In this document: positions 42,901-48,900 of the stretch, one piece after another
Layout of the letters: every line of letters begins with the position of its first letter
Position numbering within the stretch: position 1 is the first letter of the stretch
Origin: Antechinus flavipes
Lineage: Eukaryota
DNA length: 64,000 nucleotides
Reading direction: 5' to 3'
NCBI RefSeq assembly: GCF_016432865.1
Contig: NC_067398.1
Span: 244,218,001-244,282,000, forward strand
Translations under genes and position numbers: made by a program
Notes under the pieces: model-generated
What the model saw: the letters and a program-made list of their open reading frames with translations, nothing else
Told to the model about the DNA's origin: nothing
Databases searched by the model: none

Positions 42901-45900
42901 CCCACAGCTGGGGTGGACCTGTGAAAGTGCTATATTCCCAAAAATAATCTTGTCAACTTCTACAACATCTTGTTACCAGTTCCCTCACCTTCTCGGGCCA
43001 ATTCACTGAGCTCCGTGGCATGGTCTACCTCCCCTGCCAATTGTTCTTCAGCAGCTATTGTATCCTCTTCATCCTCCGCTAGGGAAGAAAGCAAACAAAA
43101 TCAAAAGTGGAGAGAAGTTATATACACTCCCCAAGGCGGAAAAAAAGATGATTTGAAAGACTAACCTTCATCCTCATCAGCTCTGAATTCCTCATCCTCC
43201 TCATCTGGATGCCACAATTGTTTGTTTCGCTGTGTGACAGGTACTGGGTGCTTTCTCTAAGGAGAAAATGTAGAGAGTGAGAAAATCAGTGTAGAAGCAT
43301 AGGAAATAGGTACTATTAGCTCACCCACCACAGAATGACCCTTAAGCCTACTGTCTCCCAAGTCACTGTTGCCACAGGCATGACCAGGACAAAAGAGTAA
43401 TCAAGGGATTTTATTTTTAGCACCAGCTACCAAGTCTTAGCCCCACTGCCTAGAGGCAGACCTGTGGAAGTGCTGAACCTTAGAAGACTATTCCATGCTA
43501 ACACCAAAACACCTTCAATACAGGTCCTAATTTTCTCCAAATGAGATATCAGAATGAGAATCACAGATTTCCAATTGGAAGAAATTCTAGTAGGCATCTA
43601 CTTCGACTTATATTAGAAAATAAATTCTAAAATATACCTTTGAATAATTAGTGAGTAGCCCCACTTTTTTCTGAGGCTAACTACTGGGAAGCTGCTTTTG
43701 AAATGAAATCTAAATTGCTTTTTCAACTTTCATCAAATGGCCTAAAGACTACAAGAAAAACGACTTCTTCTCATCAACAGCTCTTCAAATACATTTAAGC
43801 TACCATATCCCTTTTTTCTATTTTCATAGAATAAACACCCCAAATTTCTTCAACCTTACAGGAATCTATTTTTTATGAATTTGAGGCTCTTCTCCATCCT
43901 GGCAGTTCATCTCTGGGTACTTTACATTACACCAATAGCACTCCTAAAATAGGGAACCCAGGATTGAACCTAATATTCTAGATATGGTCTAATTAACCAA
44001 GACAAGAATACTGCAGAATTATTCCACTATAACAAAATAGTCGAGTTGGTACCAGATTCCACTGGTCAAATACCAATGATCACATTTTTAGGCTCTGATT
44101 AGAAGTCTCTAATCCTTTCTTTTGTGTGTGTGTCAGCTTTTCTTTTTTTTTTAAATTATAGCTATTTATATACAAAGAATATGCATGGGTAATTTTTCAG
44201 CATTGACCCTTGCAAAAACTTCTGTTTCAACTTTTCCTTTCCTTCCCTCCATTCCCTCCCCTAGATGGGAGGTAGTCCTATTCATGTTAAATGTTAAAGT
44301 ATATGTTAAATACAATATATGTAAATATATATCTATACAGTTATCTTGTTGAACAAGAAAGATCAGATGTACAAAGAGGGTAAAAATAACCTGAGAAGAA
44401 AAACAAAAATGCAAGCAAACAATAACAGAAAGAGTAGAAATGTTATTTCTCATTTCCCAGTGTTCTTTCTGTGGGTGTAGCTGGTTCTGTTCATTACAGA
44501 TCAACTGAAACGGATTTGGATCCTCTTATTGTGGAAGATAGCCACATCTATCAGAACTGATTATCATATAGCATTGTTACTGAAGTGTATAATGATTCCT
44601 GGTTCTGCTCATTTCACTTAGCATCAGTTCATGTAAGTCTCTCCAGATCTCTCTGTATTCATCCTGCTGGTCATTCCTTACAGAACAATAATATTCCATA
44701 ACATTCATATACCACAATTTATTCAACCATTCTCCAATTGATGGGCATCCACTCAGTTTCCAGTTTCTTGCCACTACGAAAAAGGCTGCCACAAACATTT
44801 TTTGCACATACTGGTCTCTTTCCCTTCTTTAATATCTCTTTGGGATATAAGCCCAGTGGTAACAAAGGGTATGCACAGTTTGGTAACTTTTTGAGTATAC
44901 TTCCAAATAGCTCTGCAGAATGGTTGGATCCGTTCACAACTCCACCAACAATGCATCAATGTCCCAATTTTCCTGCATCCCCTCATTTTTGCAAATCTGA
45001 CTAACTAAAAACCTTTAGTCTAGACTAGACATGGGAAAGGGAGGATTGAGGTGTGGGTAGAGGAGAACAATGTGCCAAAGAAGACAGAACAATGTGCCAA
45101 AGAAGACAGGAAAAAATTTGAAAGTGAATGAAGTATGTAGTGTGTAGTGGTGCCTCAGAGTTGTCTTAATTTGCATTTCTCTGATCAATAATGATTTGGA
45201 ACACCTTTTCATATGACTAGAAATAGTTTCAATTTCTTCATTTGAAAACTGTCTGCTCATATCCTTTGAATATTTATCAACTGGAGAATGGCTTGATTCT
45301 AATCCTTTCCAAACCAATAGCAGACTTAAAATTCATCCATCTTCTCTACCCTGCCTTTTCTCTTGTACCTTTGGACCTGGGTGAGATTCCTCTTCTTCAC
45401 CATCCTCCTCTAGGACCTCCTGAGAGTCACCATCACTTGAGGAAGGGACCTGACTGGGACTGGAAGGCGCAACCAATAGCTGGGGTGGCAAAGAACGTAG
45501 TAGTTCTTCCAAGGGCAATTCTCCCTCACGACGAAGCAGTTCAATCTCACGTCTCTGAGTCTCTGCATCATTGCCCTCTTGTTGTTCCTCTACCTCAATT
45601 GTTTCTTCATCATCTTCTTCTTCTTCTTGTGGCTGAAAGTCCCCATCTAGAGCATAAAAAACAAGTTCAGAACTACAAGTTAATTAAGTCAGTCACAGGT
45701 TTGAACTGTTCTGAGGAACATAAGAAAGCAAACTGATTCAAAAGCACCCACCTTCATCATCAAGCTGGAGAAGGACAGGAGGTGGAGGACTAGAAGCAGC
45801 TGAACCAGTGTGAGAAGAACCAAGGCCAGGGGAAGAGCCAGCTTTGCTTGGAGTTGGGGCAAGAGGCTGATTGAGGCTCTGGCTCAGCAAATCGGAATAC

Positions 45901-48900
45901 TTCTCTGTTTGGCCCACAATAAAGTCAAGTTGAAGGTCTAGGGCTTTTTTTCGCTTTTCCTCTAGTCTAGACTGCTGTTTGAACTGTACCACCTATGAAA
46001 ATCAGGGAAGAAATCTAGGTCAGAACTACTATATAATATGATCTCTCAGGATAGAGCCTGTGTTACTTCTACAAGCTGTCTACTTTTTGCCTGTCACTCA
46101 GTACCAGCAGGACCCATGTGCATTACAAAAATGAAATGTTATTCCTGATATTAAGGTGGCTTCTTCTTGCCAAGGCCAACCTTTCTATATGTGGTTTTGA
46201 TCTGACAGGTCTGATTCTATCCCAGTCCTCAGCCAGCATCCAAGGAAGCAATTCCTATAGAGAAGGGTTCAGTTATTCCCACCAACTGAAATCTAGCTGC
46301 TACACAAAAGACATGCAAAGCCACACTATCTGAAGCATTGGGGAACCTGGGGGAGAGGTAGGAGGCAGCATGTTTTAGGCAAATCAGACCATCACTATCT
46401 GGCTAGCAATCTCCCCTTAAACCTGATGGAGACAAACGGGAATCCTGAATCCAAGAACCTTGCAATGGTACCTTCCAGAGGTCTTAGTATCGCAGAAACC
46501 ATAGTCATCATCCTAGCCGATGGAGATGTGGTCTGCTAATTGCTCCTGCAAGTATTATACCCACAACTACTAAAGACCCAGAAAGGAAAGTTCTTGGCAC
46601 TATCAAATAGTTTAACACCAGAAACTGATATGATTTTATCAGTGGAAATTATATCAAAGGGGGAGCATTAACTGTTGCTACTACACCCAAAGGATCACTC
46701 CATTTTTCCATCTGACCTGAAGCCAAAATCTTCCACATGTGCACTCATTCTCCAATTAGAATGTGAGCTCCTTGAGAGCAGGGATTCTCTTGCTTTTCTA
46801 TTTGTAATGCTTAGCACACTTAATGCTTTTTACATAGTAAATGCTTAACAAATACTTCATTCACTTTCAAATCCTTTCCTGTCTTCTCTGGCACATTGTT
46901 CTCCTCTACCCACACCTCAATCCTCCCCTTCCCATATCTAGTCTAGACTAGAGGTTTTTAGTTACTTATAAACATACCCAAGTCTCCTTATCCTTAAAAA
47001 TCATAATCATCCCTCAAACTATCACCCTATTACAGCTTTTTTTTTTAATTAAAGCTTTTCATTTACAAAAACATATGCATGGATAATTTTTCAACATTGA
47101 CCCTTGTAAAACTTTCTGTTCCAAATTTTTCCCTCTTCCCTCCCACCCCCTCCCCTAGATGGCAAGTAGTCCACTATATGTTAAATATGTTAAAACACAT
47201 GTTAAATCCAATACACGTATACATATTTCTAGTTTTCTTGCTGCACAAGAAAAATTGGATCTAGAAAGAAAAAAAAACCTGAGAAAGAAAACAAAATACA
47301 AGCAAACAACAACAGAAAGAGTGAGAATGCTATGTTGTGATCCACCCTCATTTCCCACAGTCCTCTCTCTAGGTGTGGTTGGCTCTCTTCATCACTGAAC
47401 AATTGGAACTGATTTGGATCCTTTCATTGTCCATCAGAATTGATCATTGTATATAATCTTGTTGCTGTGTATAATGATCTCCTGGTTCTGCTAATTTCAC
47501 TTATCATCAATTCATTTAAGTCTCTCCAGGCCTCTCTGAAATCATCCTGCTGGCCGTTTCTTACAGAACAATAATATCCCATAACACTCATATACCATAA
47601 TTTATTCAGCCATTCTCCAATTGATGGGCATCACTCAGTTTCCAGTTTCTAGCCACTACAAAAAGGGCTGCCACAAACATTTTTGCATATGTGGATCCCT
47701 TTTCCCTCCTTTAAGATCTCTTTGGGATATAAGCCCAGTACAAACACTGCTGGATCAAAGAGTATGCTCAGTTTAATAACTTTTTGAGCATAGTTCCAAA
47801 TTGCTCTCCAGAATGGTTGGATCCATTCACAGATCCTCCAACAATGTATCCCAGTTTTCCCACATTCCCTCCAACATTCATCATTATCTTTTCCTGTCAA
47901 CTTAACCAATCTGAGAGGTGTGTAGTGGTGTCTCAAAGTCATCTTAATTTGCATTTCTCTGATCAATAGTGATTTGAAGCGCCTTTTCATATGACTAGAA
48001 AGTTTCAATTTCTTTATCTGAAAATTGTCTGTTCAAATCCTTTGACCATTTATCAATTGGAGATGGCTTAAATTTTTATAAATCTGATCTTAAATATTAT
48101 ATACATAATATAAATCTTATAAATTTGAGTTAATTCTCTGTATTTTAGAAATGAGGATTTTTATCAGAACCTTTGAAATTTTTTTTTTAATTTTATTTAA
48201 TAATAACTTTGTATTGACAGAATCCATGCCAGGATAATTTTTACACAGCATTGTCCCTTGCAATCACTTATGTTTCGTTTTTTCCCCTCCCTCCCTCCTC
48301 TCCCTCCCCCCCCCCCCAAGATGGCAAGCAGTCCTATATATGTTAAATATGTTGCAGTATATTCTAGATACAATACATATTTGCAGAACCGAACAGTTCT
48401 CCTGCTGCACAGGGAGAATTGGATTCAGAAGGTAAAAATAACTCGGGAAGAAAATCAAAAATCAAATAGTAGAACCTTTGAATTTAAAGATTTTTTTTCC
48501 CCAGTTTATTGCTTCCCTTCTAATCTTGTCCATATTAGTTTTGTTTATACAAAAGCTTTTTAATTTAATATAATCAAAATTATCTACTTTGTGATCAATA
48601 ATGGTCTCTAATTCTTTTTTGGTCACAAATACCTTCTTCTCCACAGATCTGAGAGGTAAACTATCCTATATTCTTCTAAACTATTTATATATTCTTTATG
48701 TCTAGATCACGAACCCATTTCAACCTTATCATGGTACATGGTGTTAGGTGTAGGTCAATGCCTAATTCCTGCCATACTAATTTCCAATTTTCCCAGCAGT
48801 TTTTGGTCAAATAGTGAGTTCTTATCCCCAAAGCTGGGGTCTTTAGATTTGTCAAACATTAGATTACTATAGTCATTGACTATTTTGTCCCGTGAACCTA

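What the first reader, a model, noticed from the sequence alone, without database searches (positions are those of the whole stretch)
45002..46964. Local inverted templated insertion creates complementary arms around SRCAP exons 7-8
Seen: 45002-45136 interrupts an L1 (12-bp TSD) next to a ~30-nt L1 deletion. It is the reverse complement of 46852-46964 (107/113 identical) plus a 22-nt internal tandem duplication, and the source contains the 16-nt palindrome TCTAGTCTAGACTAGA (46937-46952). One arm is in intron 8 and the other in intron 6, enclosing exons 45992-45752 and 45646-45369: 519 nt, phase 0 to phase 0. Established: flanking inverted intronic repeats promote back-splicing, exon skipping and A-to-I editing; nearby inverted templated insertions are typical of template-switch or Pol-theta repair. 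Inference: a lineage-specific ~110-bp pre-mRNA duplex could yield a 519-nt circSRCAP and/or an in-frame isoform lacking 173 aa (end of the HSA region plus the acidic linker). It could also affect the SNORA30 in intron 8.
Basis: partly seen in the sequence, partly recalled or inferred. Interest (0 to 1): 0.7.

Follow-up and report, generated by a model that had tools for sequence, protein, structure and literature searches.

The report
Backwards intron copy flanking SRCAP exons
A 113-base piece of one SRCAP intron was copied backwards into an old L1 relic in a neighbouring intron of this marsupial, so two coding exons now sit between complementary arms; this is a real DNA-copying scar of a known kind that could favour a circular RNA, but no RNA data could be obtained to show that it does.

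Summary
45002-45136 (+) is the reverse complement of 46852-46964: 107 of 113 bases identical, plus an exact 22-nt tandem duplication. It sits inside a 5'-truncated L1 that has its own 12-bp target duplication. No third copy exists in the 64-kb window. The arms are the only significant complementarity between or within the two introns flanking SRCAP exons 45992-45752 and 45646-45369 (519 nt, in frame).

The insert has no target duplication, no poly(A) and no junction microhomology. That argues against L1-type retroposition, and it also fails the textbook hallmarks of MMBIR or Pol-theta repair. A one-off local copy-and-paste during repair or replication is the best reading.

As pre-mRNA the arms would form a 112-pair duplex (about -199 kcal/mol), and 5 of the 6 differences are G.U wobbles.

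The multicopy-repeat rival is therefore weakened but not excluded.

A rat cerebellar circSrcap already uses the orthologous donor without this insert. The scan's unchecked notes list at least six similar inverted local copies elsewhere in this dasyurid genome. Interest is modest.

The parts
45002..45136 (+). Inserted inverted copy (135 nt). As pre-mRNA it forms the arm in the downstream intron, 233 nt after the donor at 45369.
   Evidence: reverse complement of 46852-46964, 107/113 identical. L1 homology stops at 45001 and resumes at 45137.
45064..45107 (+). Exact 22-nt tandem duplication inside the insert (45064-45085 and 45086-45107). It forms a 22-nt bulge in the predicted RNA duplex.
   Evidence: family D14, 100%; 22-column gap in the source; bulge.
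46852..46964 (+). Source segment (113 nt). As pre-mRNA it forms the arm in the upstream intron, 860 nt before the acceptor at 45992. By my recollection of the SINE consensus, its first ~10-14 nt are the tail of a MIR-like SINE that lies at about 46740-46865.
   Evidence: The SINE core is recognised by a weak match to a second MIR-like copy. Where its tail ends could not be confirmed from the window.
46937..46952 (.). 16-nt perfect palindrome TCTAGTCTAGACTAGA in the source. The copy in the insert (45014-45029) carries one change.
   Evidence: self-inverted 16/16; C/T difference at 45015/46951.
44120..45297 (-). L1a: a 5'-truncated L1 relic in the same orientation as SRCAP. It is flanked by the 12-bp target duplication at 44108-44119 and 45298-45309 and hosts the insert.
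   Evidence: 85% identity to L1b over about 800 nt.
45752..45992 (-).
   Evidence: AG at 45994-45993 and GT at 45751-45750.
45369..45646 (-). Its donor AAG|GTACAA lacks the consensus G at +5.
   Evidence: It is the orthologue of the 275-nt last exon of rat circSrcap.
43349..43476 (-). SNORA30-like H/ACA snoRNA in the same intron as the insert (intron about 43257-45368).
   Evidence: RF00415, 70.9 bits, E 1.4e-12, full model length, below the gathering score of 90. No match at gathering threshold.
47036..48070 (-). L1b: a second L1 relic in the same orientation as L1a, so it does not pair with L1a. It was used as the reference for the uninterrupted L1 sequence.

Best explanation
A single germline copy-and-paste event in the dasyurid lineage copied 113 nt of the upstream SRCAP intron (46852-46964). 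The copy went in backwards at a break or stalled synthesis inside an old L1 relic 1.7 kb away in the downstream intron. A 22-nt stretch was duplicated during or after the event. The two copies have since drifted apart by about 5%.

The result is a non-transposon inverted repeat that brackets two in-frame coding exons. In the pre-mRNA it can form a near-perfect 112-pair stem that brings the donor at 45369 and the acceptor at 45992 together.

Shown: the copy, its direction, its junctions, the absence of other copies in the window, and the pairing potential. Inferred: the mechanism of copying, and any effect on splicing. The most likely effect is at most a low level of a 519-nt circular RNA or of exon skipping, without demonstrated selective value. 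That is, a largely neutral scar.
For: - Copy and duplication.
- Interruption of the L1.
- No third copy in the window at E<0.01.
- By my recollection of the SINE consensus, the source starts inside a MIR-like SINE tail, so the unit is not a natural element. The tail boundary could not be confirmed from the window.
- No target duplication, poly(A) or microhomology at the junctions.
- Divergence is 6/113 = 5.3% (95% CI 2-11%), all transitions.
- Cofold energy is -199 kcal/mol against -62 +/- 4 for shuffled sequence, and no competing inverted match exists within or between the two introns.
- Inverted repeats of 30-40 nt suffice for circularisation in minigenes: PMC4201285.
- Unchecked scan notes report at least six similar local inverted copies of 76-245 nt in this genome.
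Against:
- No relative's sequence was seen, so lineage specificity and the polarity of the six changes are inferred only.
- The absence of junction microhomology does not fit the usual template-switch signatures.
- Five of the six differences keep pairing as G.U in the sense RNA (P about 0.01-0.03, post hoc). This could hint at constraint rather than neutrality.
Confidence: 0.72

Rival explanations
1. Both arms are members of a young, low-copy interspersed repeat family that inserted independently. One candidate is a 5'-truncated non-LTR element mobilised by an RTE- or L2-type LINE, which needs no poly(A) and leaves little or no target duplication.
For: - The insert lacks poly(A) and a target duplication, as such elements often do.
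- On the plus strand the source directly follows a MIR-like SINE in the same orientation, so a longer composite element cannot be excluded.
- Genome-wide copy number was not measured.
Against: - No further copy exists in 64 kb, although L1 and MIR fragments recur there.
- Two copies only 1.7 kb apart at 95% identity is improbable for a family too rare to appear elsewhere in the window.
- The L1-interrupting copy has exactly the extent of the homology, with no further partial matches.
- Unchecked scan notes describe several analogous events in this genome whose templates are unrelated sequences: L2, L1, LTR and unique DNA.
Confidence: 0.1
2. The arms are a functional, lineage-specific splicing switch. 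Their pre-mRNA duplex drives a 519-nt circSRCAP and/or an in-frame isoform lacking 173 aa, and the pairing is maintained by selection.
For: - The stem is long and has no competitor, lying 233 nt and 860 nt from the splice sites.
- The donor of the second exon is weak, AAG|GTACAA.
- Rat makes a circSrcap that ends at the orthologous donor.
- Five of six substitutions are G.U-compatible in the sense strand, P about 0.014-0.033.
- Short repeats are sufficient in minigenes.
Against: - No RNA evidence of any kind was obtained.
- The wobble excess rests on n=6, is post hoc, and is also expected from transcription-associated strand asymmetry of transitions (my own knowledge).
- The 22-nt duplication disrupts the stem rather than preserving it.
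- Liang and Wilusz found that not all repeats work and that G.U wobbles can abolish circularisation.
- Gruhl et al. found that repeat dimers at circRNA loci decay like others, without evidence of selection.
Confidence: 0.12
3. The insert was made from RNA. A fragment of nascent SRCAP pre-mRNA, tethered at the locus, was reverse-transcribed at a break in the downstream intron by L1 ORF2p or Pol theta, and the copy joined without TPRT hallmarks.
For: - The plus strand of the insert has the sense of the SRCAP pre-mRNA.
- The template is local and intronic.
- The junctions are blunt, without microhomology.
- Five of the six differences put A/T in the insert where the source has G/C. Four of them are G-to-A on the RNA-sense strand, as cytidine deamination of a first-strand cDNA would give.
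Against: - A DNA template explains the same facts.
- The changes cannot be polarised without an outgroup, and 5 of 6 in one copy has P about 0.2 by chance.
- There is no poly(A) and no spliced or lariat junction that would mark an RNA origin.
Confidence: 0.05
4. The inverted copy is an assembly artefact.
For: No independent reads could be laid on the junctions.
Against: - The copies differ at 6 sites and by a 22-nt duplication.
- The insert lies cleanly inside an L1, with L1 sequence resuming on the far side.
- Artefactual fold-backs are usually adjacent, long and identical (my own knowledge).
Confidence: 0.01

Closest known systems
Templated insertions from replication template switching (MMBIR/FoSTeS-type MMB-TI; PMC8421209)
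   Same: The insert is an inverted copy of a nearby template placed at one point, with the template left intact.
   Different: The described signature has microhomology at both junctions and, as searched for in that paper, a template within 100 bp and an insertion no longer than a read. Here there is 0-nt microhomology, the distance is 1.7 kb and the length is 113-135 nt.
Polymerase-theta end-joining templated insertions (PMC7165422 and related papers)
   Same: The event is a copy of flanking sequence. The internal 22-nt re-copy resembles iterative synthesis.
   Different: TMEJ inserts are typically a few to a few tens of nucleotides, copied from within tens of bases of the break and bounded by microhomology (my own knowledge). 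None of these holds here.
Inverted-repeat-driven exon circularisation (Alu pairs at ZKSCAN1 and HIPK3, PMC4201285; young TE dimers across mammals including opossum, PMC8516420)
   Same: Complementary intronic arms flank internal exons, at distances and lengths that work in those systems.
   Different: The arms are not transposable elements but a one-off local copy. No circular RNA has been shown.
Rat circSrcap (rnCircRNA-200, cerebellum; PMC8516420, supplementary file 14)
   Same: Its four exons of 186, 141, 223 and 275 nt match in length and order the window's exons of 186, 141, 241 and 278 nt. It ends at the orthologue of the donor at 45369.
   Different: It begins two exons further upstream, and it arises in a species that does not have this marsupial insert.
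Human circSRCAP (hsa_circ_0006127; PMC11755828)
   Same: It comes from the same host gene.
   Different: It is made of exons 26-27, far from this region.
L1 3' transduction or orphan transduction
   Same: The source lies 72-185 nt downstream of the poly(A) end of L1b on the L1 sense strand, where read-through transcripts would run.
   Different: The insert has no poly(A) tail, no target duplication and no L1b-derived part.

Membership tests
Local inverted templated insertion (generic copy-paste scar) | The insert is the reverse complement of a nearby sequence that is still present. | tested here: met
   107/113 identical, 1.7 kb away.
Local inverted templated insertion (generic copy-paste scar) | The insert interrupts otherwise continuous sequence, which gives the direction of copying. 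| tested here: met
   L1 homology to L1b continues across the removed insert. By my recollection of the SINE consensus, the source runs on from a MIR-like SINE tail.
Local inverted templated insertion (generic copy-paste scar) | The unit is not a dispersed repeat; only these two copies exist. | tested here: inconclusive
   No third copy in the 64-kb window. The genome-wide test was not possible. The metagenome blanks are uninformative because the L1 control was also blank.
MMBIR/FoSTeS template-switch insertion | Microhomology at the switch points. | tested here: not met
   0 nt at both junctions. About 5% later drift could hide 1-2 nt.
MMBIR/FoSTeS template-switch insertion | Template close to the insertion (within 100 bp as operationally defined in PMC8421209). 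| tested here: not met
   The distance is 1716-1792 nt.
Pol-theta (TMEJ) templated insertion | A short insert copied from sequence next to the break, with flanking microhomology and usually a deletion at the break. | tested here: not met
   The insert is 135 nt and the template is 1.7 kb away. There is no microhomology and no deletion at the junction itself; the 27-nt deficit lies 10-25 nt away and is judged against one 85%-identical L1.
L1-mediated retroposition (TPRT), including 3' transduction | A poly(A) tail and a target-site duplication of about 7-20 bp around the insert. | tested here: not met
   The 12-bp duplication belongs to the host L1a, not to the insert.
Inverted-repeat-dependent circRNA locus | Complementary sequences in the introns on both sides of the circularised exons, pairing across rather than within introns. 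| tested here: met
   it is the only inverted match at E<0.01. The cofold energy is -199 kcal/mol.
Inverted-repeat-dependent circRNA locus | An observed back-splice junction (donor 45369 joined to acceptor 45992), resistant to RNase R. | not testable with these tools
All listed RNA runs are kept as contigs only.
SNORA30 (RF00415) | Score at or above Rfam's gathering threshold of 90 bits. | tested here: not met
   70.9 bits for 43349-43476 and 55.7 bits for 42799-42933, with full-length model matches at E 1e-12 and 6e-9. These are probably divergent marsupial orthologues.

The most novel reading that the evidence does not exclude
The backwards copy works as a lineage-specific splicing switch in a dosage-sensitive chromatin remodeller. 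Its stem drives a 519-nt circSRCAP or an in-frame isoform lacking 173 aa, and pairing has been kept by selection, since 5 of the 6 substitutions are G.U-compatible in the sense RNA. Together with the other such copies noted in this genome, one of which brackets NIBAN3 exons 4-5, it would show that non-transposon templated insertions are a recurrent source of new circRNA loci in dasyurids.
Probability: 0.1. Interest if true: 0.55.

Novelty: new member of a known kind. Interest (0 to 1): 0.3.

Why it matters
Circular RNAs are generally thought to arise where young transposable elements happen to land in opposite orientation on either side of exons. A clean case where the complementary arms come from a one-off local copying error would show a second, transposon-independent route to such loci. 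It would also offer a natural with-and-without experiment among closely related dasyurids, in a gene (SRCAP) whose dosage matters for development. On its own, and without RNA evidence, it is one more repair scar in an intron.

Tried and rejected

- A metagenome scan for a 25-mer of the arm found nothing. A control scan for a 28-mer shared by both L1 copies also found nothing, so the first blank carries no weight.

**Searches that gave little**
- Rfam at gathering threshold gave no match in the window. Only the E-value mode recovered the SNORA30-like genes.
- I tried to fix the end of the MIR-like SINE from other copies in the window. Only one very decayed copy exists (52177-52257), which is too old to resolve the tail.
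- A protein search with ORFs over the arms was considered and dropped.
- The stored part of the opossum circRNA annotation of Gruhl et al. holds no SRCAP entry. The files were cut when stored, so this says nothing.

**Readings rejected**
- L1 twin priming, because the insert is not L1 sequence.
- 3' transduction from L1b, because there is no poly(A) and no target duplication.
- A transposon with terminal inverted repeats, because the interior holds conserved SRCAP exons.

- Pfam was run exon by exon, by reference.
- No contig taken for human was fetched.

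
Full report
**What is there**

The stretch 45002-45136 on the plus strand is the reverse complement of 46852-46964.
- The repeat finder reports two overlapping inverted pairs, 86 nt at 95% and 51 nt at 94%.
- A direct alignment shows one unit of 113 nt with 107 identities. 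A 22-column gap appears where the insert carries an exact tandem duplicate, 45064-45085 = 45086-45107.
- In a blast of the window against itself, this is the best inverted pair of all 64 kb (E 1e-32 and 8e-15). The only other inverted pairs are L1 fragments more than 12 kb apart.
- The 16-nt palindrome at 46937-46952 is exact.
- No third copy of the 113-nt unit is found in the window, even with 7-nt words at E up to 10. Apart from the self match, the two arm matches and the palindrome's self-inverted match, the best hit is a 15-mer.

**Setting**

SRCAP runs on the minus strand.
- Four coding exons lie upstream in the window: the ATG exon near 52.5 kb, then exons near 51.9 kb, 51.2 kb and 50.5-50.64 kb.
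- Next come 45992-45752 (241 nt) and 45646-45369 (278 nt). Both have canonical AG and GT borders, and the next exon is at about 43256-43166.
- I cannot confirm the numbers 7 and 8. They are the 5th and 6th coding exons seen here.
- Pfam's HSA domain matches the end of the 51.2-kb exon (profile positions 2-33 of 71, E 4e-11) and should finish in the next exon. The bracketed exons are therefore post-HSA plus the acidic stretch.
- Pfam was run exon by exon, by reference.

Two L1 relics lie in the two flanking introns in the same orientation: L1a at 44120-45297 and L1b from 47036. They are 85% identical over about 800 nt, so they cannot pair with each other. The 12-bp duplication TCTAATCCTTTC (44108-44119 and 45298-45309) is the target duplication of L1a.

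**Direction and nature of the copy**

With the 135 nt removed, L1a aligns across the junction to L1b: CTGAC|GTAGTGTGTAGTGG against CTGA-GAGGTGTGTAGTGG. So 45002-45136 is the insert.

The source is continuous with its surroundings. By my recollection of MIR-type SINE consensus tails, its first 10-14 nt read as the end of a MIR-like SINE whose core is recognisable at about 46740-46860. The unit copied is therefore an arbitrary piece, not a natural element. The only other MIR-like copy in the window is too decayed to confirm the tail.

The insert has no target duplication, no poly(A) and no microhomology at either junction.
- This excludes L1-type retroposition. It also excludes a 3' transduction from L1b, even though the source lies just downstream of L1b's poly(A) end.
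- It also fails the defining marks of MMBIR-type or Pol-theta templated insertions. As described in PMC8421209, and from general knowledge, these are short, close to the break and bounded by microhomology.
- The L1 'deletion' is 11+16 nt missing relative to L1b, 10-25 nt left of the junction. With only one 85%-identical comparator it cannot be tied to the event.

I therefore file it as a local inverted copy-and-paste scar of unresolved enzymology. Candidates are capture of a locally synthesised fragment by end joining, a long-range template switch, or, less likely, reverse transcription of nascent pre-mRNA. The insert's plus strand does have the sense of the SRCAP transcript.

**Age**

Six differences in 113 sites give 5.3% (95% CI 2-11%; K2P 0.056). 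The run index lists relatives holding 0.85 down to 0.24 of the sampled 31-mers. By (1-d)^31 this corresponds to roughly 0.5% to 4.5% divergence. The insertion may therefore be about as old as the split from the most distant listed relatives. This is an inference, and no relative could be examined.

**Pairing potential**

As minus-strand RNA the two arms cofold at -199 kcal/mol, against -62 +/- 4 for shuffled partners. The stem has 112 pairs, one mismatch and a 22-nt bulge.

No other inverted match at E<0.01 exists between the two introns or within either of them. The arms lie 860 nt before the acceptor and 233 nt after the donor. [quoted passage not shown] They also showed that not all repeats work and that G.U wobbles can abolish circularisation (PMC4201285).

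**A small oddity**

All six differences are transitions. In the sense RNA, five of them give G.U wobbles and one gives C.A. With the local transition fraction of 0.64, the chance that at least 5 of 6 random substitutions keep pairing is about 0.014. It is about 0.033 if transitions are biased 60:40 towards the G.U-forming direction, as transcription-associated strand asymmetry would produce (the asymmetry itself is from my own knowledge).

This is post hoc and rests on six sites, and the 22-nt duplication works against a conserved stem. Gruhl et al. found no selection on repeat dimers at circRNA loci (PMC8516420). I take it as a note, not as evidence of function.

**What is known about circles from this gene**

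- The published human circSRCAP comes from exons 26-27 (PMC11755828).
- Gruhl et al. annotate a rat cerebellar circSrcap with exons of 186, 141, 223 and 275 nt (PMC8516420, supplementary file 14).
- These match in order and length the window's exons of 186, 141, 241 and 278 nt. The rat circle therefore ends at the orthologue of the donor at 45369.
- Back-splicing at this donor thus occurs in a eutherian without the marsupial insert. A circle found here would need a with-and-without comparison before it is credited to the arms.

**SNORA30**

Nothing reaches Rfam's gathering score in the window. In E-value mode two full-length matches to RF00415 appear: 43349-43476 (70.9 bits, E 1.4e-12), in the same intron as the insert, and 42799-42933 (55.7 bits), two introns further on. 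Any effect of the arms on snoRNA processing is speculation.

**What could not be done**

- Two metagenome scans were blank, including an L1 control, so they say nothing.
- As a result, genome-wide copy number, presence in relatives, back-splicing, skipping and editing are all untested.
- No human contig was fetched.

**Earlier notes of this scan**

These are unchecked leads. They name the genome as an antechinus or other dasyurid. They also list at least six other local inverted copies of 76-245 nt, among them one bracketing NIBAN3 exons 4-5 and one in an FCHSD2 intron said to be shared by related species. So the scan has found this kind of feature before on other DNA of the same genome. That makes a one-off local origin more plausible here and lowers the novelty of a single case. 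The recurrence itself may deserve a census.

**Verdict**

The origin as a local inverted copy is well supported, but its mechanism is unresolved and the multicopy rival is not formally excluded. The functional reading is plausible and untested. It is a new member of a known kind, of modest interest.

Noticed in passing
window 45002-45136 versus 46852-46964: All six differences between the arms are transitions. Five of them are G.U wobbles in the sense (minus-strand) RNA, and five of six put A/T in the insert. P is about 0.014-0.033 for pairing being kept this often (post hoc, n=6).
   Followed up: partly
window 45959-45973 and 46940-46954: The first bracketed exon holds a 15-mer (coding ...QSRLEE...) that is identical or complementary to the palindromic part of the source arm (blast E 0.013 in the window). 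In the pre-mRNA, the upstream arm could therefore also pair with the exon. This is probably chance.
   Followed up: no
window 42799-42933 (-) and 43349-43476 (-): Two SNORA30-like H/ACA genes lie in successive SRCAP introns. Both are below Rfam's gathering score (55.7 and 70.9 bits against 90) but match the full model length.
   Followed up: partly
window 45365-45369 (-): The donor of the second bracketed exon is AAG|GTACAA, without the consensus G at +5. The orthologous donor is the back-splice donor of the rat cerebellar circSrcap (PMC8516420, supplementary file 14).
   Followed up: partly
window 44120-44143: Between the L1a target duplication and its poly(T) lies a (TG)n-containing stretch, ttttgtgtgtgtgtcagcttttc. 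It is either an expanded or decayed tail or a short transduced piece.
   Followed up: no
window 46866-46879, 45297-45310 and 44107-44120: A 14-mer in the source arm matches the L1a target-site duplication with its flanks in 13 of 14 positions. The match is at chance level by blast (E 2.2).
   Followed up: no
window 62374-62996: An L1 fragment inverted relative to L1a and L1b (78-87% identical) lies beyond the SRCAP 5' end near 55 kb. It could pair with them only in a read-through or upstream transcript.
   Followed up: no
window 20037-20127 and 34361-34759: Tandem repeats turned up in the self-blast: a 44-nt period at 98% and an approximately 48-nt period at 73%.
   Followed up: no
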